Shown here: piece by piece, positions 45,577 to 54,628 of the stretch | Layout of the letters: every line of letters starts with the position of its first letter | Position numbering within the stretch: the first letter of the stretch is position 1 | NCBI GenBank assembly: GCA_907165135.1 | Contig: OU015568.1 | Location: 9,362,001 to 9,426,000 of the forward strand | Direction of reading: 5' to 3' | DNA from: Oikopleura dioica | Lineage: Eukaryota > Animalia > Chordata | DNA length: 64,000 nucleotides | Position numbers and translations under genes: made by a program | The notes under the pieces: generated by a model | What the model was told of the DNA's origin: nothing | Databases searched by the model: none | The model's input: only the letters and a program-made list of their open reading frames with translations

Positions 45577-48500
45577 ATGAAGCTTTCACCATTGTTGGTG
45601 ATTTCTTCAGCGTCGGCGCTAGAATGCTATACTTGTCAGACTTCAGATCCTTCCACGGTAAGTTAAAAATTTCACCGCTTAGTGAATGGATATTCCAGAG
45701 CGGCGGTTTTAGACTGAAACTAAGTTACTCTCAAATGCTTAGATAATCGAACAGCTAAGTTTGCAGGGTCAAATTTTACTTACTGACTTTCGAAGCCAAA
45801 GTCATATTTTTACAATTTTAGTGCACGCTTGAAAAATGCCCAAACGACGGCCAAGAATGGGCCTGCCAAAACGAAGTGCGTTCTCATTCTCGACATTACT
45901 TTGTCGCAAAGGGCTGTAAGCAGCGAATGGCGTGTATGAACAACTCAATTCAAAACGACCGAGCAGCGTGGATTCCGTCCCAATGCAACCCTCTCAACCC
46001 CTACAACTCCGTCTGCCGCTGCTGCTGCGATGATAGAGACGGGTGCAACAAGGAGGACATCTTTTGTCTGGAAGCGCCGAAATGTCCTGAACTGGAGAAG
46101 AGAAAGAATCTCGACATGGAATGCACAAAAATGAGGGAAATAGGATCAGAATGTTCCTTCGAGTGCTCTGGAGATGCCGAGCTCGTTGGAGCGACGAAGA
46201 TTTCTTGCAATAATATGGGTAAGGCGGAAGTTCATCGAATGAACTTTTTACTCCTTACTCCTTTCTTTTTATTTGAAAACTTTCCTAGCTACCTGGGCTC
46301 CCGAGCAGCCAAAGTGCGTACCAAACTGTCCAACAATCGAATTCGAAGGAGGTAGCAAAGAATGCTCAAATGGTCGACGAAGCGGGTCAACGTGCAAATT
46401 CTCATGCCGAGAAGGGACACGATTAGTTGGTTCAAAGTCAACCACATGTGCGGCTGATGGTAGTTGGACTCGCGAAGCACCGACTTGTGAACCCATTTGT
46501 GATGAGCTGGAAGTAGCAAATGGCGATGTTCGTTGCTCGAATCGGAACTTTTTGGAGTCCATTTGTCAAATTTCCTGTGATGGGGATTTTGAGCGAAACG
46601 GTCCAGGAAAGGCGCTTGAAATTTTCGCTTGCATTTTATTCTCAACATTTTTCAACGCCAGAAAAAGCCACGCAAACGTGCAAACAAATCCGGGAATACA
46701 CGGCTGACTGGGACGGTAACGGTGAAACTTCCTGTGAGGCTGTTTGCAAAGCCCTGACGGACATCCCCTACGGATCAACATCATGTTCAAACGAAAACAA
46801 ACGCAACTCCGAGTGTTCATTTTCCTGCAATGATCGATTCCGCTTGCTAGGTTCTCCTATTATCACGTGTCAAAAAGACGGAAAAAGCTCCAATGGCCTC
46901 GATTGGTCCGGCCCGCTTCCAGTTTGTGAAGCGATTTGCGAAGCAATCCCTGTTCCTGAAAACGGCGAGAGTAGCTGCACAGACGGGCGCAATTTAGGCT
47001 CAACTTGTGCATTTTCATGCCCCGCTGGGACTCGATTAATCGGCGATAAGGCCTCAACCTGTACAGGATTCGGTGGCTTAGCTAATTGGACTACTCAAGC
47101 GCCACTTTGTGAACCAGTCTGCGACGATCTCACCTTGAAGAACGGCGAAATAAATTGCACCAACGACAATTTTCTGAATTCAAAGTGTTCATTATCCTGC
47201 GCCAAAAAATACGAACGCAACGGGCCAAGTTCTCAGACTTGCGTCGAGACCGGCCCCGCAAAAGCAGACTGGGACGGGGCATTAACGACCACTTGTCAGC
47301 CAATCTGTCAGCCATTGGTCGACATTGCAAACGGGGCCACAAGCTGCAACGATGGATCAAGGTACGTTCAAAGGGCCAGCATAAGATTCTCGACTAAAAC
47401 TGACAATGTCTATGTAAAGTGATGATGGATCTATTGGAGTAAAAGTTTACTTGTCAAACGTGGCCAGACGTTGTTATTGTTAAACTTGCCATTGTTTTGA
47501 TGTTTGACAAGAGCTACAACATCGAATTTCTGTGTTACTCTTTAACTTATTTGTGATTTTAGAATAAACTCAAAGTGCGAGTTCTCCTGTAACGAGCGAT
47601 ATCAGCTTCGTGGCTTTCCCTCTGTTACTTGCCAGCTTGATCGGACGATGGAAAATGGCCTCGGCTGGTCTGGCCCGATCCCTGGTTGTGAGCCGATTTG
47701 CCCAGAAGTGCCTAAGGTTGAAAATGCAGTGGTTGCTTGCGACAGTGCCACAGACATTGGCTCCATCTGTAAATACGTATGTAAGAGGGGCTTTGAACTA
47801 GTCGGCCGACCAACAACGACTTGTCTACTGGATGTCACCGACAGCACTGCTAACTGGGAGATAGGACTTCCACGATGTCAACGAACGTGTGATAAGCCAA
47901 TTGAAATTGAAAACGGCGAGGTGTCTTGTCAGGATGCGGGTTTTGTGATCGATCTATTTAATTTTTCTTCCCTTGAAATTATGATTTATCGAAAGCGAAA
48001 ATCTCTACTAGGGTTACGTAGATAGAAAGCTTTCCTTCTCCAATTCCTGGAAAAGATGAATTTTAGAAAGATCTTCAACCCTTGTTCCAGGAAAGCGGAA
48101 TTTCAGCCGGCCAAGTCTGCCAATACTCCTGTAACTCTGGCTACGAGCTTCGAGGAGAACAATCGACAACGTGTACAGTCACTGACGGTGGCAGTAGCTG
48201 GACTAATGCTCCACCAAGTTGTGAGCCAGTTTGTGGAACACCGCCAGTGATAGAGGGAGCGACAAGAACATGTGATAACGGAGACAGGGCGACATACAGC
48301 GTTGATAGCAAATGTCAGTTTGAATGTGGCGCGATGTCGAGAATGGTTGGCGATGACAGTATTGTCTGCAAAAAGGCACGGAGTAACTGATTCTACTCTC
48401 ATGATTTACTTATTCTCATCTAAGTGATCAAATCTGTTGACTTCGAATTAGGACTTCAACGGCCGAGCCTACTGGTCCGATTCTCGTCCAACTTGTATTC

Positions 48501-49978
48501 GTAAGTACCCGGATCATTCTTCTACGAAAAACAACTACGAATAGTCGTCTTGATTTTAACAAACTCGTAGCCACTTGCGCCCAGCGAACTATTCATACAC
48601 CACCGATGGCTGTTGAATGCACCAGTGGACGTGACATCGGTTCCACATGTAGTTTCGCCTGTAACGAATTGACGACAATGGAAGGTGAAGCATCTGTCGA
48701 CTGTATCGCTGATGAAATAAGCGGAGAGCCAGTTTGGTCGGATGAGTTTCCAAAATGCAAACGTAAGTTGAAAATTATCGTGTTCTAGCGACGTGTTTCC
48801 CTGTTGTTGTCTCATGAATTATTCAACGATTTCTAGCGCTCTGCCGCCAATTGCCCAAGACGGAAGCAAAACTAATTTCCTGCGATAATGGCAACAATGC
48901 CGGTTCAATTTGCACGGCCGAGTGTGCTGACTTGGGTTACCAACTGGCCGGAAACGAGGCGGTCACGTGTTCCACAAGCAAAGTCAAAGTTGATATGGAG
49001 AAGGTGTTGTTGAGTAATGAGTCGAACAGGAAGAGTTTCAATGTGGAAGTTGAAGCATTCGAAGAAGTTGCCGAGTGGGATGGACTTCTCGGTGTTTGCG
49101 AAAGTACAATTTTGTTACGAAACTCAACTTCTAATTATGTTTTAGGGACTCTCTGCCCTACTTTGGTGATGATCGAAAACGGGCAAGTAGCATGCACGGG
49201 GAGCAAATACGAAGACACATGTGACTTTAAATGCAACGACGGCTACAGGTAACATCCGGCGCGAGATGCGTCTTCTATCTTCCTCAAAATTTCAACATTT
49301 CAAACATTCCTTTCAGTCTTGACGGGCCCGCCACGGTCACGTGCTTATCGGGAAGTCGCTGGTCATCGACTGTCCCGCGCTGTTTACCCATTCCCGAGGA
49401 GGAACTCGCTGATTGCCCGATTTTGAAGACTAATCCTATTGTGCAAGCCGAATGCACGCAAGGCAACAAGGAGAGGGTCTATTTTTAGCATAACTATCGC
49501 CAAGTTGATTTCACAGAAATTTATGAAAGCAAAAATAAACCCTTGAAAACAGGTTGGCTCATTTTGCGCCTTCTCCTGTCCGACCGGTTACAAACTGATC
49601 GGATCAACTTCGACCGAATGTCTTGATTCGGCTTCGTGGAGCGAAGAAGAACTGCCCGACTGCAAGGTGGGAATTTGCGCTTTGCGAGAGCACTGTCATT
49701 AATTTGAACCGCGTTTCTAGGTGCGCATCATGATCTCGAGATGGATTTCGAATTTGGCGTTAGAGTACCAACCCAACTGGCGCTCCGCGGTTGAAATAAG
49801 CGTCATTCCACGAAATAGAGATGGAAAAGACGACGTGATCGACGAGGTCGTTTGTGAATTAATGCAGTGCCAGAATATTGAAGAATTCTTCGCATGGATT
49901 GAGGAGAATGGATATCAACTCAGTGAGGCCGAGAGAGAAGATGTTGAATTTTGCTGCGATGTTCCAGTTGAAGAATAA
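45577..49978 (+). CDS. Secreted protein: Ly6/uPAR-like domain + ~14 CCP/sushi repeats + short C-terminal domain
   Basis: Signal MKLSPLLVISSASA, then LECYTC...CQNEVR..KGCKQ..CRCCC..CN and repeated C..C..C.F.C..G..L.G....C....W....P.C modules. Ends ..FCCDVPVEE*. Confidence 0.88.
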
Positions 49979-50233: not shown

Positions 50234-51119
50234 ATGCCATATTCTTACAATCGCTACTCCTCGGACTCGTATAGAGCGAGTTGCGCCTCTTTATATGGCG
50301 TGAAAGATATCCTCGGTGGTAGGACACCTTCTAACGATCCGTCAGCCGATAGGAGTAGGCCATCTTACAGTTTTTCTTCTGATTTGGAGAGGACAAAATC
50401 GGAGGCATTTCGCCCAGCGACAAGATATACCGATAGTTTGAGGTGAAGAAGTCCCTTTTGACAGAGTTGAATAAGATCTTATAGGGACCTGGATAGTCAG
50501 CTGAAATCGCTCAAGTTATCTTCGTCGACCCCATCTAACACATCAACGTCGAGCTCCCACTATCTGCGTCGTCCGGCCACGGGCCTTTACAATCGGTACA
50601 CAAGCAGCACTTGTGTGACCAATACTTTACCGAGCATTTCTCCGTCCAGGGAAACCTACAACAGCTCGAAATATGGAACACCGACATCTTCTCAATCGCG
50701 TTACGATATCAGCTCTAGTCAGTCGATATTAATCCCTCCCGGTAGAGAAGCTCAAAAATCTCCAGCTGAAGAAGAATTGAACTGTGCCAAAAGAGCAAAT
50801 GAAATTTTAAAATCTGAGAATCAACAATTGAAATTTGAATTAAGAAAAGTGAAGGCTGAAAATAAGAAATTGATCAATATTAAGCAAGACTTTGAGGGAA
50901 AATTTGGTAATTAAACGTTCAATTTTTTTAAGAAATGATTTTTATTCAGAGTGCCGTATATGTTTTGAGATTTACGATACAGAGGAGCATTTTCAAGCAA
51001 CTCTCAAATGTGGCCATGCGTTTGGGGAGAACTGCATTCGAGCTTATTTACAGAGTGTGAACCGCTGTGCCCTCTGCAATCAAGCCGCCAATATTCACGA
51101 TTTACGCCGCGTTTACTAA
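50234..51119 (+). CDS. RING finger protein (C3HGC3-type, C-terminal) with Ser-rich N-terminus and coiled coil
   Basis: Three exons: Ser/Tyr-rich start, ILKSENQQLKFELRKVKAENKKL, then CRICFEIY..CGHAFGENCI..CALC..*. Confidence 0.85.
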
Positions 51120-52388
51120 ATGATTTTAACAAAAATATGCTCTCGCGAAAAAATTATATTCGAATATTTCTAATGCATGAGTTGTTGAGTTAACCGGTGC
51201 GCGTAAATCAAGCCGCAAATGAGCAGATCTTCACCCGGGAGTCAATTAGCCCATGAATCAGAGTCTTTGGAAAAACGGGCGGGCAGCGTAAGGGCTAATT
51301 ATTTACTTCACACGTTTTCGCGAAGGACGCGAATTATTATCGCATTAGGCTTGTGACACCTGAGGCCCGATATTTATCCTAATACATTTTCGAAACAGAG
51401 CCTTGTTATCCTTTTCGTTGACGAGAACTGCTAAGTACGGGTTTGTAAACTTTTGGCTTGATCACTCGGAAGTTGCAAAATAAATCGTCGGTGGCACGTT
51501 TTGGCGGTTTTGATTCAAAGATTCAGAGACTCACTCTGCGGCCGGGGCTTGTTGACTTGGCGCGCCCGCCAGATGCATCGATCCTGTCAATTCAACTACT
51601 ATCAGAGGCGACTCTCGATTCCCAATTGTATACGAGAGATAAAAGCATGGGAGCTTGCTTTTTTGGAATTTAGAAAAATCGTCATTTTCTCAAAAAAAAA
51701 AATAGCGCGAAAATCATCAGTTTTTTCTACTCGAAAAGTTATTTTATACTGTCGTTCTAGTTATACTCTTCTTTGCATATTTGTGGAGCTGGCTGGAATT
51801 TTTTATTGCGTGGTTAAATTGTGGAGTCTCGCGGTGCTGGGTTTAATCGATTCTGCGGCCGGGCCCGAACCCGTGTCGGACAAAGAAGTGGAGGAATTTC
51901 AAAGTTCTAGTGTCAGGATACCTCTGCGGCCGGCCTCCTTCTTATCTTATGTATCCAAAAGTGTCTTTCGGCGAAGTGCATCTCACAGAAGGAAAGAGTG
52001 GCGAACTGGAATGTCGCAGTCAACAAAACCCGCAAGAATTGGTCAACGAGTTTTTTCGCGTGAACTCGATCTTTTTTGTGTAACTCAAATAAAACTCAAA
52101 TAACCATTATTCAGGTGAACACTAGAATTTCGAGCAGTGAGTCTGCGATTCAAAAAATAGCTGTTAAGAAAATTGCTGAGAAAATAGTTTCTCGACCAGT
52201 TGTAGGAACCTGCCGCTGCAGATGTCTCGCTGGATCATCCGATAATGACAGAAAAGCTTTTTTCTTCACGAAAGCGGCTCTCCATGCAAATTGCTAATGC
52301 AAAAACGAAGCCAAGTGTAATTTGTACTTTTTTCATTGAGTCATTTTTTCAAAATAGCGTATTTGATTTCGCTTTCGATTCATTTTTT

Positions 52389-52650
52389 TCATCCTTCAAG
52401 GAGTTTTTTCGCGTAGTTTCCAAGGGTGAGGCCATCAAATTTTTTCATAAAAGACACTTGAAGATACAGTATGTTAAATATCGACTGCTACACTTGTATA
52501 AGACTTACACAATGATTTCACACGACCGTTTGACTCCCTAAAGCATCATATACAAGCATGAAATAAAAGTACTCACGATTGATAATGATGCCTAGCTCCA
52601 CTTCCATCAGCGATCGAATATAAAAAGAGAAGAGGGACGAAAATATTCAT
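52389..52650 (-). CDS. Small secreted peptide precursor A (56 aa, 3 exons)
   Basis: Exons 52577-52650, 52509-52537 and 52389-52456 with GT-AG introns: MNIFVPLLFLYSIADGSGARHHYQSESNGRVKSLLSFMKKFDGLTLGNYAKKLLEG*. Confidence 0.85.
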
Positions 52651-52960
52651 TTTAAAACTTCTTGCCTATTTGTCCTCAAAGAGAATTCCACACTTTCTTT
52701 TAAACATGAACTTATTTAAAATTCATTGGATTGAATCGAGCATCCGATTGGGAGCAAGACATCGAAAACAGATGTCTATGCCCATATAATATGGGCCATA
52801 TTCTTTGATAAGAAGTAAATTAAATATCGACCTACTAGTAGTGAAAAGTAGTGGTATCACAAAATAGAAGAAACATTTTATTATAAATAACAGCATTAGT
52901 ATTAAGACATTAATTTGAGTGAAGGACGAAAATTGAAACAGGGCTAGAAGAAAGATATTT

Positions 52961-53229
52961 TTAGCCTTGAAGGAGTTTTTTTGCATAGTTCCCGAAAGAC
53001 ATCTCATCAATTTTTTGAATAAACGAAACTAAGGCATTACTATTTTTGTTTGAAATTTGCCATATAAATTTGACATCAATAACTTACGCAGTGATTTCAC
53101 GCGGCCAGACTCCCTGAAATTCTTTGATAAACTCTTAAAAAATTTAAGTATTTACGATTCAAAATGATGTCTAGCTCCGCTTCCATCAGTTGCTGAAAGA
53201 AAAGCCAAAAAAGTGATCGAAAGCTTCAT
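52961..53229 (-). CDS. Small secreted peptide precursor B (55 aa, 3 exons)
   Basis: Exons 53156-53229, 53088-53113 and 52961-53028: MKLSITFLAFLSATDGSGARHHFESESGRVKSLLSFIQKIDEMSFGNYAKKLLQG*. Confidence 0.85.
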
Positions 53230-53344
53230 TTAGTCGGTTTTAGTAGTGAAAAAAAACCATACATTGAATCGGAATCCACTTGCTTTTGATTCTTATCATT
53301 TATTTCTTTTATTCTTTTTTCAGAAAAAGTTTCAATTTAAAATT

Positions 53345-53595
53345 TCAGTCTTGAAAAATGTTTTTAGCATAATTTCCCAGAGTTAGGCCATCAAATTTGC
53401 TCATGAACGAAACTAAAACACAGTCATTTTGTATATCAATGACGACTTACGCAAGGATTTGAAGCGACCATTTTTAGCCTCTCTAAAATATTATAATTAA
53501 TATTTATACACAATGAAATTTTACGAATGGAAATGATCTCTATTTCCGTCTCCAGCAACGAAAGCAAAGAGGAAAATAATGAAAGAATATTTCAT
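53345..53595 (-). CDS. Small secreted peptide precursor C (56 aa, 3 exons)
   Basis: Exons 53525-53595, 53451-53482 and 53345-53412: MKYSFIIFLFAFVAGDGNRDHFHSEAKNGRFKSLLSFMSKFDGLTLGNYAKNIFQD*. Confidence 0.85.
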
Positions 53596-54219
53596 CTTTA
53601 AAAACTCTGAAAAATGCCGAAAAACTTAAGCCAAAGTTAGAAAATGATTCTATTTATACACTTTTAGTAATTACAAATTCATGGAAATTGAAACAAGCTG
53701 CCAATAGACATGTCGATTAAAAGGCAAGATAGCATTCTTTCCTACTAAGTGGCGGACAAATTAAGTACCTAATAAGACAAAAAATAAGGCGACGGAGCAG
53801 CGAAATGGAAATGAGTTTTGAACTTTCTCGCCAATAATCGCCTTTCTGTACAAAATTCCAGAGCTGCGGCTCTTTAGTGTGAAGCAATCCAGGTGCTTCT
53901 AATTCTGAGTTGTTGGCGAGCTACTATCTGCGTTACTACCTTGTTTCTGCGGTTGTTAAAACTTCGGCACGGGCTCCAACTCTCTCTTATCGCCTCGTTT
54001 CATCAAGGCTCGAAAAACACGTGAACGGTTCATGCTTTTTTTTTGTTCAAAGGTTGTGCTCTTCTCTGCAGTCATTAATTTTCAGAAAATATTTTTTGGG
54101 AAAATTTTTATTAAAATCAAAAAGCATTTTTTGCAAATATTGATTGTTTGCGATCAGATGCAGACGAAAAAATATCAGAAAAATTCACTGAAATCTTGGA
54201 AAAAAAAGAGCAGAAGAAG

Positions 54220-54628
54220 ATGGAAGGTTGGGAGGTGCTTATGATTGTAATAGCAGTGATTGCATTTTTAGTTTGTAAGATCATTTTTTTAATGTTTATA
54301 ATTAACATTTTTTCAGGTTTCAGTTATCTTCTAAAATGCTGTTGGAAATTAAAGAAAATCAGAACTTCGTCTTCAAATGGTTCAGAAAGTCCAGTTGCCG
54401 ATGCAGAAGCCAGGCCGAGTTCAAATTCTGCTGACAGTGATACTCGCCCGGAGCCAATAGCACCAAGTCAAATAGAAATCGATGCGCCCGAAGTTCCCGA
54501 AGGTAAACCATAGCTTCGAATTTATTCTTATGAAAGAAGTTTTTATTACTAAAAATATTCAAGAATCCGTCTCGAGGGGAAAAGAAGATTTACCTCCAAG
54601 TTACGATGATATTCTAAATGAGTGGTAA
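54220..54628 (+). CDS. Small single-pass membrane protein with juxtamembrane Cys and a C-terminal PPxY motif
   Basis: MEGWEVLMIVIAVIAFLV|CFSYLLKCCWKLKK..PEVPE|ESVSRGKEDLPPSYDDILNEW*, joined through two short GT-AG introns. The start could lie further upstream. Confidence 0.7.

What the first reader, a model, noticed from the sequence alone, without database searches (positions are those of the whole stretch)
52389..53595. Hidden cluster of three micro-genes encoding secreted amphipathic peptide precursors
The cluster is invisible to the ORF track because every exon is under 75 nt. Three tandem genes share identical intron phases (2,1), identical last-exon length (68 nt) and conserved protein despite divergent DNA, indicating purifying selection. 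Architecture: signal peptide, short His-containing pro-segment, conserved GR, then (V/F)KSLLSF(M/I)xK(F/I)DxxxxGNYAKxxxx. A and B end in a bare Gly (LLEG*, LLQG*), the substrate for peptidylglycine alpha-amidation (established chemistry); C ends QD*. The post-GR peptide has helical hydrophobic periodicity and net charge about +3/+2/+1. Hypotheses (inference): an antimicrobial/host-defence peptide family, a peptide hormone or neuropeptide family (DGLTLGNYAKKL loosely echoes glucagon-family DGTFTSDYSKYL), or small house components. I do not recognise the family.
Basis: partly seen in the sequence, partly recalled or inferred. Interest (0 to 1): 0.82.

Follow-up and report, generated by a model that had tools for sequence, protein, structure and literature searches.

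The report
Tandem secreted helical-peptide micro-genes, Oikopleura
Three tiny neighbouring three-exon genes in this planktonic tunicate genome are real and kept by selection. They encode about 55-residue precursors of secreted, probably amidated helical peptides with no detectable relatives, and what the peptides do is still unknown.

Summary
On the minus strand of 52389-53595 lie three tandem genes of 55-56 codons. Each has three exons (71-74, 26-32 and 68 nt), six GT..AG introns of 38-59 nt, and intron phases 2 and 1.

- **Selection:** exons are 59-74% identical in DNA, while introns and flanks sit at or near shuffle level (introns up to about 2.5 SD above). Substitutions pile up at third codon positions. 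In the part after the conserved Gly-Arg, dN is 0.18-0.30 against dS of 1.2-2.9.
- **Protein:** a signal peptide, then a conserved His-bearing polar piece ending in Gly-Arg, then a 26-residue part with two amphipathic segments around a hinge. A and B end in Gly just before the stop.
- **Genome context:** the genome (64.28 Mb, 19 contigs) fits Oikopleura dioica OKI2018_I69. It has a PAM-type hydroxylase gene and proprotein convertase domains.
- **New here:** two more diverged members sit side by side on another chromosome (contig C5).
- **Relatives:** none in Pfam, PDB sequences, two very large protein libraries, metagenome contigs or the paper library. The glucagon echo has no statistical support.
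- **Function:** unproven. The mature part is constrained while the signal peptide drifts, which slightly favours a specific ligand over a membrane-active defence peptide.

No RNA or cross-species evidence could be obtained. The scan has noted other hidden peptide genes in this genome, but not this family.

The parts
53525..53595 (-). Gene C exon 1 (71 nt): ATG, signal-peptide-like hydrophobic N-terminus, start of the polar His-bearing piece; ends in phase 2
   Evidence: model; hydrophobic fraction 0.79 and a phase-2 GT donor at 71 nt
53451..53482 (-). Gene C exon 2 (32 nt): encodes the stretch up to Gly-Arg and the first residues after it; ends in phase 1
   Evidence: repeat family D3
53345..53412 (-). 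Gene C exon 3 (68 nt including the TGA stop): conserved helical part, ends FQD*
   Evidence: repeat family D1; profile hit E 8.8e-13
53156..53229 (-). Gene B exon 1 (74 nt): ATG, signal peptide, DGSGARHHFES piece; phase 2
   Evidence: repeat family D2
53088..53113 (-). Gene B exon 2 (26 nt); phase 1
   Evidence: D3
52961..53028 (-). Gene B exon 3 (68 nt including the TAA stop): ends LLQG*
   Evidence: D1
52577..52650 (-). Gene A exon 1 (74 nt): ATG, signal peptide, DGSGARHHYQS piece; phase 2
   Evidence: D2
52509..52537 (-). Gene A exon 2 (29 nt); phase 1
   Evidence: D3
52389..52456 (-). Gene A exon 3 (68 nt including the TGA stop): ends LLEG*
   Evidence: D1
53646..53657 (-). TATA-like GTATAAATAG about 55 nt upstream of the gene C ATG (approximate coordinates, read by eye; function inferred). 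A and B carry AAATAA-type stretches about 60-75 nt upstream of their ATGs.
   Evidence: read directly; not tested
53305..53316 (-). AATAAA polyadenylation-type hexamer about 30 nt after the gene C stop (approximate coordinates). Gene B has one about 80 nt after its stop. Gene A has no canonical hexamer within 90 nt.
   Evidence: read directly downstream sequences; not tested

Best explanation
These are three members of a five-locus, taxon-restricted family of tiny genes. Each encodes a prepropeptide of about 55 residues.

Shown:
- The reading frames, splice structure and protein sequence are kept by purifying selection after old duplications.
- The N-terminus has the build of a cleavable signal peptide: an 11-13 residue hydrophobic core followed by small residues before Asp-Gly.
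- The C-terminal 26 residues form two amphipathic segments around a central hinge.
- The genome carries a PAM-type hydroxylase gene and proprotein convertase domains.

Inferred:
- The protein enters the secretory pathway.
- It may be cut after the conserved Gly-Arg.
- In A and B (and in paralogue D on contig C5) the terminal Gly is converted to a C-terminal amide. That would give peptides of about 25 residues, or about 41 residues if Gly-Arg is not cut.

The part after Gly-Arg and the polar piece before it are the constrained parts. Polar residues and six consecutive residues, KSLLSF, are invariant among A, B and C, while the signal peptide drifts freely. For that reason I take the most likely role to be a secreted ligand that binds a specific partner (hormone, neuropeptide or pheromone-like) rather than a generic membrane-active peptide.
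For: - Gene models with six GT..AG introns, conserved phases and 68-nt last exons.
- Exons conserved, introns and flanks not.
- NG86 dN/dS is 0.15-0.43 over the whole CDS. After Gly-Arg, dN is 0.18-0.30 against dS 1.2-2.9, Fisher p 1e-5 to 5e-3. For the signal peptide, dN is about equal to dS.
- Variable columns at codon positions 1/2/3 are 11/3/18 after Gly-Arg.
- Residue identity among A, B and C is 3-4 of 14-15 in the signal part, against 9-12 of 14-15 in the polar piece and 14-19 of 26 in the helical part.
- Two amphipathic segments, none of 5000 shuffles as high.
- The AlphaFold2 model of paralogue D gives a helix over residues 10-32, mean pLDDT 74.
- A PAM-type hydroxylase gene lies at G000:C4 near 3.93 Mb; its best PDB matches are all PAM, E 1e-14.
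- Convertase P domains occur at 7 or more loci.
- Paralogues D and E lie on contig C5. D has the same 71-nt first exon, a 42-nt phase-2 intron and an ending LIEG*.
Against: - No RNA evidence for transcription or for any of the six junctions.
- No orthologue from another lineage or species could be reached, so selection is shown only among paralogues.
- Cleavage at Gly-Arg lacks the upstream basic residue that I recall as usual for monobasic convertase sites.
- C ends in Asp and E in Ile, so amidation is not a family-wide feature.
- Tandem one-peptide-per-gene clusters, as I recall, are also typical of host-defence peptides.
- No receptor or expressing cell type is known.
Confidence: 0.4

Rival explanations
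1. Linear alpha-helical host-defence (antimicrobial) peptides. After secretion and amidation, the cationic amphipathic helix-hinge-helix peptides would insert into and disturb microbial membranes. Cecropin-type peptides work this way, and as I recall their genes are also small and tandemly clustered.
For: - Length about 25 residues, about 46% hydrophobic residues, and net charge +3 (A), +2 (B, D).
- Two amphipathic segments around a Gly-containing hinge.
- C-terminal Gly in A, B and D.
- One peptide per small gene, in tandem clusters with a degenerate copy (E).
Against: - Charge is not conserved: +1 in C and -2 in E.
- The mature part is the most conserved part and the signal peptide the least, the reverse of what I recall as usual for antimicrobial peptide families.
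- No Pfam antimicrobial family matches at E <= 10.
- No activity or induction data exist.
Confidence: 0.25
2. Small extracellular structural or accessory components, for example of the larvacean house, the gut lining or the egg coat. They would act by helix-helix self-association or by binding matrix components rather than a receptor.
For: - Signal peptide and a high share of conserved hydrophobic positions, compatible with helix packing.
- Oikopleura devotes much of its secretome to lineage-specific house proteins, most without relatives elsewhere (PMC3390340).
Against: - No Cys, no repeats and no glycosylation-rich stretch. As I recall, catalogued oikosins are much larger.
- In the house proteomics the proteins were run briefly into a 6% gel and split only at 75 kDa. 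That paper neither supports nor excludes peptides of 3-5 kDa.
- No protein in the libraries searched, oikosins included if they are held there, matched the last-exon profile.
Confidence: 0.15
3. Not functional genes. Either these are transcribed but untranslated remnants, or a repeated element whose open frames are accidental.
For: - No transcript, annotation or homologue could be found in any library.
- Gene A lacks a canonical AATAAA after its stop.
- Family member E has no recognisable first exon within 1.6 kb and lies beside transposon-like repeats.
Against: - Three copies keep intact frames, start and stop codons, six canonical splice sites and intron phases even though synonymous sites are near saturation.
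- Substitutions show coding periodicity.
- Introns and flanks have decayed to background while the exons have not.
Confidence: 0.07

Closest known systems
Amidated peptide prohormones and neuropeptide precursors in general (signal peptide, pro-piece, basic cleavage site, C-terminal Gly as amide donor)
   Same: Signal-peptide-like N-terminus, a conserved Arg before the helical peptide, and Gly as the last residue in A, B and D. The mature part is more constrained than the signal peptide. PAM-type hydroxylase and convertase genes are present in the genome.
   Different: There is no sequence relation to any described peptide family. The cleavage site is monobasic Gly-Arg without an upstream basic residue. 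C and E lack the terminal Gly. The expressing cells and any receptor are unknown.
Cecropin-type linear helical antimicrobial peptides (insect cecropins, ascidian styelins and clavanins; recalled from general knowledge, not tested by sequence beyond Pfam)
   Same: Small precursor with one peptide per gene, tandem gene cluster with a degenerate copy, helix-hinge-helix build, and a terminal Gly for amidation in some members.
   Different: No Pfam match. Charge is low and not conserved, +3 to -2. The conservation pattern is reversed: mature peptide conserved, signal peptide variable.
Glucagon/secretin/PACAP family (Pfam Hormone_2) and CRH/DH44 family (Pfam CRF), ligands of class B receptors
   Same: Helical peptides of about 25-40 residues, often amidated. 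Hormone-receptor-domain loci exist in this genome. There is a loose resemblance at DG..(L/F)..NY.K.L, and in paralogue D at PP.S...F (my own recollection of those families).
   Different: No match to either Pfam model at E <= 10 and none to any PDB chain at E <= 10. The Asp-Gly is internal, not at positions 3-4 of the mature peptide. There is no His or Tyr at position 1 and no Phe at position 6.
Other hidden peptide micro-genes noted by this scan in the same genome (s1-342422, s1-365293, s1-534429)
   Same: Tiny multi-exon genes for secreted peptides, missed by ORF scanning, in the same larvacean genome.
   Those notes describe other peptide types. I did not test them.

Membership tests
Glucagon/secretin family (Pfam PF00123, Hormone_2) | Significant match to the family profile | tested here: not met
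   hmmscan of all exon peptides against Pfam-A at E <= 10 returned no family. phmmer against PDB chains at E <= 10 returned nothing.
Glucagon/secretin family (Pfam PF00123, Hormone_2) | Mature N-terminus of the type His/Tyr-Ser/Ala-x-Gly-Thr-Phe directly after the cleavage site (feature recalled from general knowledge) | tested here: not met
   Read from the models. Asp-Gly lies at residues 12-13 after Gly-Arg. Residue 1 is Val or Phe, and no Phe follows the Gly at +2.
CRH/urocortin/DH44 family (Pfam PF00473, CRF) | Significant match to the family profile | tested here: not met
   No Pfam family at E <= 10 for any exon peptide, including the 29-residue contiguous exon of paralogue D.
Amidated secretory peptide precursor (generic kind) | N-terminal cleavable signal peptide | tested here: inconclusive
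   Hydrophobic core of 11-13 residues followed by small residues before Asp-Gly. No dedicated predictor such as SignalP was available.
Amidated secretory peptide precursor (generic kind) | C-terminal Gly (or Gly plus basic residues) as amide donor | tested here: met
   A ends LLEG*, B LLQG* and D LIEG*. C ends in Asp and E in Ile, so this is met in 3 of 5 members.
Amidated secretory peptide precursor (generic kind) | Amidating enzyme encoded in the same genome | tested here: met
   Cu2_monooxygen and Cu2_monoox_C exons lie at G000:C4 near 3.93 Mb, and their best PDB matches are all peptidylglycine alpha-amidating monooxygenase, E 1e-14. The lyase (PAL) part was not tested.
Amidated secretory peptide precursor (generic kind) | Convertase cleavage site before the peptide | tested here: inconclusive
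   Gly-Arg is conserved in A, B and C; Arg-Arg is at the aligned place in E; Arg lies two residues earlier in D. There is no basic residue at P4, P6 or P8. Convertase P domains exist in the genome.
Linear cationic alpha-helical antimicrobial peptides | Amphipathic helix | tested here: met
   Two amphipathic 11-residue segments with hydrophobic moment 0.59-0.65, none of 5000 shuffles as high. The AlphaFold2 helix for D has pLDDT 74. The whole 26-mer at 100 degrees is not above shuffles.
Linear cationic alpha-helical antimicrobial peptides | Conserved net positive charge | tested here: not met
   K+R-D-E is +3, +2, +1, +2 and -2 for A, B, C, D and E.
Linear cationic alpha-helical antimicrobial peptides | Antimicrobial or membrane-disturbing activity | not testable with these tools
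   Needs synthetic peptides and assays.
Oikosins (house proteins of Oikopleura) | Detected in the house proteome, or sequence match to a catalogued oikosin | tested here: inconclusive
   No protein of any length in the 1.84-billion representative library matched the last-exon profile at E <= 0.001. I could not confirm that the oikosin sequences are held there. The supplements of PMC3390340 give accession numbers only.

The most novel reading that the evidence does not exclude
A larvacean-specific family of amidated helix-hinge-helix peptides that act as signalling ligands for a receptor still to be found. Alternatively, they could be the first host-defence peptides described in appendicularians. 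Either way the family has evolved by tandem and inter-chromosomal duplication and is absent from the protein collections that could be searched here.
Probability: 0.35. Interest if true: 0.6.

Novelty: new member of a known kind. Interest (0 to 1): 0.42.

Why it matters
Oikopleura dioica is a model chordate with a very compact, fast-evolving genome, and its peptide signalling and innate defence repertoires are poorly known. If these genes are expressed, the family shows that micro-exon genes of about 170 coding bases can escape ORF-based scanning, and it does not appear in the large protein collections searched here. It would add a set of candidate ligands or defence peptides that can be tested directly with synthetic peptides, in situ probes and the existing single-cell atlas. 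The gain is an addition to a known kind of gene, not a new principle.

Tried and rejected
1. **Glucagon/secretin or CRH kinship.** No Pfam family and no PDB chain at E <= 10. Rejected as unsupported.
2. **One continuous amphipathic helix.** The hydrophobic moment of the whole 26-mer at 100 degrees equals shuffles. Replaced by two amphipathic segments.
3. **A fourth family member just downstream of gene A.** This is the 33-codon ORF at 52336-52235, minus strand, with a signal-like N-terminus. By eye, pieces in all three frames looked family-like. Local DNA alignment to A, B and C is not above shuffles (p 0.13-0.64), and no canonical phase-2 donor exists. Not counted as a member.
4. **Homologues outside the genome.** All of these found nothing:
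   - The search for homologous proteins with the 40-residue open frame around B exon 3
   - The search for homologous proteins with an alignment of five open frames
   - a profile search of 1.84 billion representatives
   - two metagenome scans
   - peptide words in the paper library, where the one hit was an unrelated hagfish keratin paper

   The queries were only 21-42 residues, so distant relatives could not have been seen. A control with a neighbouring Sushi-domain exon found an 80% identical protein from a public sequencing run.
5. **A first exon for paralogue E.** None within 1.6 kb upstream. Transposon-like inverted repeats lie there instead.
6. **Known RNA families and tandem repeats in 51000-54600.** Nothing relevant. 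The bacterial promoter and terminator scan is at background, as expected for a eukaryote.
7. Only exon-wise references were used. Joined coding sequences were built from window coordinates inside local scripts for statistics alone.
8. It was re-run without the row.

Full report
**What is there**

On the minus strand of window 52389-53595 I rebuilt three tandem genes.

| Gene | Exon 1 | Exon 2 | Exon 3 | Protein |
|---|---|---|---|---|
| C | 53595-53525 | 53482-53451 | 53412-53345 | 56 aa |
| B | 53229-53156 | 53113-53088 | 53028-52961 | 55 aa |
| A | 52650-52577 | 52537-52509 | 52456-52389 | 56 aa |

- Exon lengths are 71-74, 26-32 and 68 nt.
- All six introns begin GT(A/G)A and end AG, and are 38-59 nt long. 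The intron phases are 2 then 1.
- The genes lie 115 nt (C to B) and 310 nt (B to A) apart, in a 2-kb bin of 34.5% G+C, the lowest of the window.

**Which genome**

The assembly has 64,281,565 bases in 19 contigs, and the window is C1:9362001-9426000. This fits the Okinawa Oikopleura dioica assembly OKI2018_I69, which has 64.3 Mbp in 19 scaffolds, a median intron of 49 bp and 11% non-canonical introns (PMC8008620). The identification rests on these numbers, not on a sequence match.

**More than chance, and coding**

- A repeat finder that knows nothing of genes recovered the three exon-3 copies (74% identity), the three exon-2 copies and the A/B exon-1 pair.
- Pairwise exon identity is 59-74%, 2.8-7.6 SD above shuffles. 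Introns are 51-63% identical, with splice consensus accounting for most of the excess, and 150-nt flanks are at shuffle level.
- Nei-Gojobori dN/dS is 0.30 (A/B), 0.15 (A/C) and 0.43 (B/C) over the whole coding sequence.
- Split by part:
  - The signal peptide has dN about equal to dS.
  - The polar piece has dN 0.06-0.30.
  - The 26 codons after Gly-Arg have dN 0.18-0.30 against dS 1.2-2.9, with Fisher p of 1e-5, 1e-3 and 5e-3.
- Variable alignment columns after Gly-Arg fall 11/3/18 on codon positions 1/2/3, p = 0.005.

The duplications are therefore old, with synonymous sites near saturation, and the frames have been kept by purifying selection. These statistics used joined coding sequences built inside local scripts from window coordinates.

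**The protein**

- *Signal-type N-terminus.* Each product starts with a hydrophobic core of 11-13 residues, followed by small residues before Asp-Gly. This is the build of a cleavable signal peptide and is too short for a membrane anchor. I had no dedicated predictor, so this is a strong inference rather than a test.
- *Polar piece.* Next comes a conserved polar piece, DGSGARHH(Y/F)xSES(N)GR in A and B and GDGNRDHFHSEAKNGR in C. A and B are identical at 12 of 14 positions.
- *Helical part.* Then come 26 residues. KSLLSF, K, D and GNYAK are invariant among the three.
- *Endings.* A and B end in Gly directly before the stop. C ends in Asp.
- *Amphipathicity.* The whole 26-mer is not amphipathic at 100 degrees per residue (z about 0). 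Its first and last 11 residues are strongly so, 0.59-0.65 against 0.27 +/- 0.09 in 5000 shuffles with none as high. The moment is minimal around the central DGLTLGN. So it is a helix-hinge-helix or kinked helix rather than one regular amphipathic helix.

**More members**

- *How they were found.* A six-frame search of the whole genome with the last exon of A gave a weak fourth hit on contig C5 (E 0.28). Reading that locus showed two genes 417 nt apart on one strand.
- *Member D.* It has a 71-nt first exon with a signal-type N-terminus, a 42-nt GT..AG phase-2 intron and one 88-nt last exon. There is no second intron. The protein is 52 aa and ends KKLIEG*.
- *Member E.* It has an 88-nt last exon with Arg-Arg at the place of Gly-Arg, ends FEQI*, and has AATAAA just after the stop. 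I found no signal-peptide exon within 1.6 kb upstream, where transposon-like inverted repeats lie. E may be a relic.
- *Is the kinship real?* A profile built from A, B and C alone finds E at E = 0.014 and D at E = 6.6 as the only non-self hits in 64 Mb. Their adjacency, shared strand, shared exon-1 length and phase, and ending at the stop make kinship credible. D alone would not be significant. Charges are +2 (D) and -2 (E).
- *Fold.* An AlphaFold2 model of the D open frame (29 real residues plus 4 from the intron, with a five-row alignment) gives one helix over residues 10-32, with mean pLDDT 74. This is modest support only.

**Processing machinery**

- The genome has three loci with both copper-monooxygenase domains.
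- An open frame at C4 near 3.93 Mb matches only peptidylglycine alpha-amidating monooxygenase among PDB chains (E 1e-14), so the hydroxylase step of amidation is available. The lyase was not tested.
- Convertase P domains occur at 7 or more loci, and hormone-receptor domains at several loci.
- These results show feasibility only.

**Relatives elsewhere**

None were found.

- No Pfam family at E <= 10 for any exon peptide.
- No PDB chain at E <= 10.
- No protein at E <= 0.001 among 1.84 billion representatives with a 21-position profile.
- Nothing among 5.8 billion clusters with the open frames around the five last exons.
- Nothing in JGI metagenome contigs.
- No paper holding the peptide words.
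- No paper on Oikopleura peptides describing such a family.

The queries were short, so only close relatives could have been seen. The libraries do hold sequences related to a neighbouring gene of this window: a control with a neighbouring Sushi-domain exon found an 80% identical protein from a public sequencing run. I could not reach other O. dioica lineages or any RNA data, so there is no orthologue and no junction evidence.

**What it most likely does**

The solid part is a family of small secreted helical peptides, some probably amidated. For the role I weigh three readings.

1. *Specific secreted ligand.* This is favoured slightly. The constrained parts are the mature peptide and the polar piece, including polar residues and a run of six invariant residues, while the signal peptide drifts. 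As I recall, that is the usual pattern for hormones and neuropeptides.
2. *Cecropin-like defence peptide.* This fits the size, the hinge, the terminal Gly and the tandem one-peptide genes. But charge is not conserved (+3 to -2), and the conservation pattern is the reverse of what I recall as usual for antimicrobial peptide families.
3. *Structural or house role.* This cannot be excluded. The published house proteomics neither supports nor excludes peptides of 3-5 kDa.

The glucagon echo, and a CRH-like echo I noticed in D, have no statistical support and fail the positional features of those families.

**Verdict**

- The family is new as a sequence family but belongs to a well-known kind of gene.
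- The scan has noted several other hidden peptide micro-genes in this genome, so this is one more of a recurring class. Interest is moderate.

Noticed in passing
window 52235-52336 (minus strand): A 33-codon ATG ORF with a signal-peptide-like N-terminus starts only 53 nt after the stop of gene A and ends in Gly. It could be another micro-gene, or the second gene of an operon with A. It has no significant DNA similarity to A, B or C, and its splicing is unresolved.
   Followed up: partly
window 52780-52796: Perfect palindrome GCCCATAT-A-ATATGGGC about 130-145 nt upstream of the gene A start codon. It may be a protein-binding site. Not tested.
   Followed up: no
window 52836-52847 and 53241-53252: An identical 12-mer (TTTTCACTACTA on the minus strand) lies about 190 nt upstream of gene A and about 12-23 nt upstream of gene B (family D14). 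It may be a remnant of a shared upstream element. If so, about 170 nt were inserted in front of A, or A has a longer leader.
   Followed up: no
window 52723-52896 (minus strand): A 57-codon ATG ORF with a very hydrophobic N-terminus lies in the spacer between genes B and A. It is probably a by-product of the A+T-rich sequence. There is no evidence for or against it.
   Followed up: no
window 54014-54105 (minus strand): Weak, sub-threshold full-length match to U6 snRNA: 20.5 bits against a gathering score of 44, E 0.07.
   Followed up: no
window 45876-49488 (plus strand): A long run of exons rich in Sushi/CCP-type Cys patterns. One 300-residue open frame has an 80% identical relative carrying Pfam PF00084 in a public sequencing run, ERR12944109.
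   Followed up: partly
window 50892-51119 (plus strand): An open frame with a RING-finger-like Cys/His pattern after a coiled-coil-like exon. This is the neighbouring gene on the low-coordinate side of the cluster.
   Followed up: no
L010 (G000:C5), about C5:577470-577590 and 577900-578200: Upstream of family member E lie a short element with about 30-nt inverted ends around an A-rich core, and a set of G+C-rich inverted and direct repeats. They look like small transposons and may have removed or separated E's first exon.
   Followed up: partly
L016:1101-1346 (minus strand; G000:C4 near 3.9296 Mb): Just downstream of the PAM-type hydroxylase exons lies an 81-codon open frame made almost wholly of His, Met, Gly and Asp. 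It is a possible metal-binding tail or a separate small gene.
   Followed up: no
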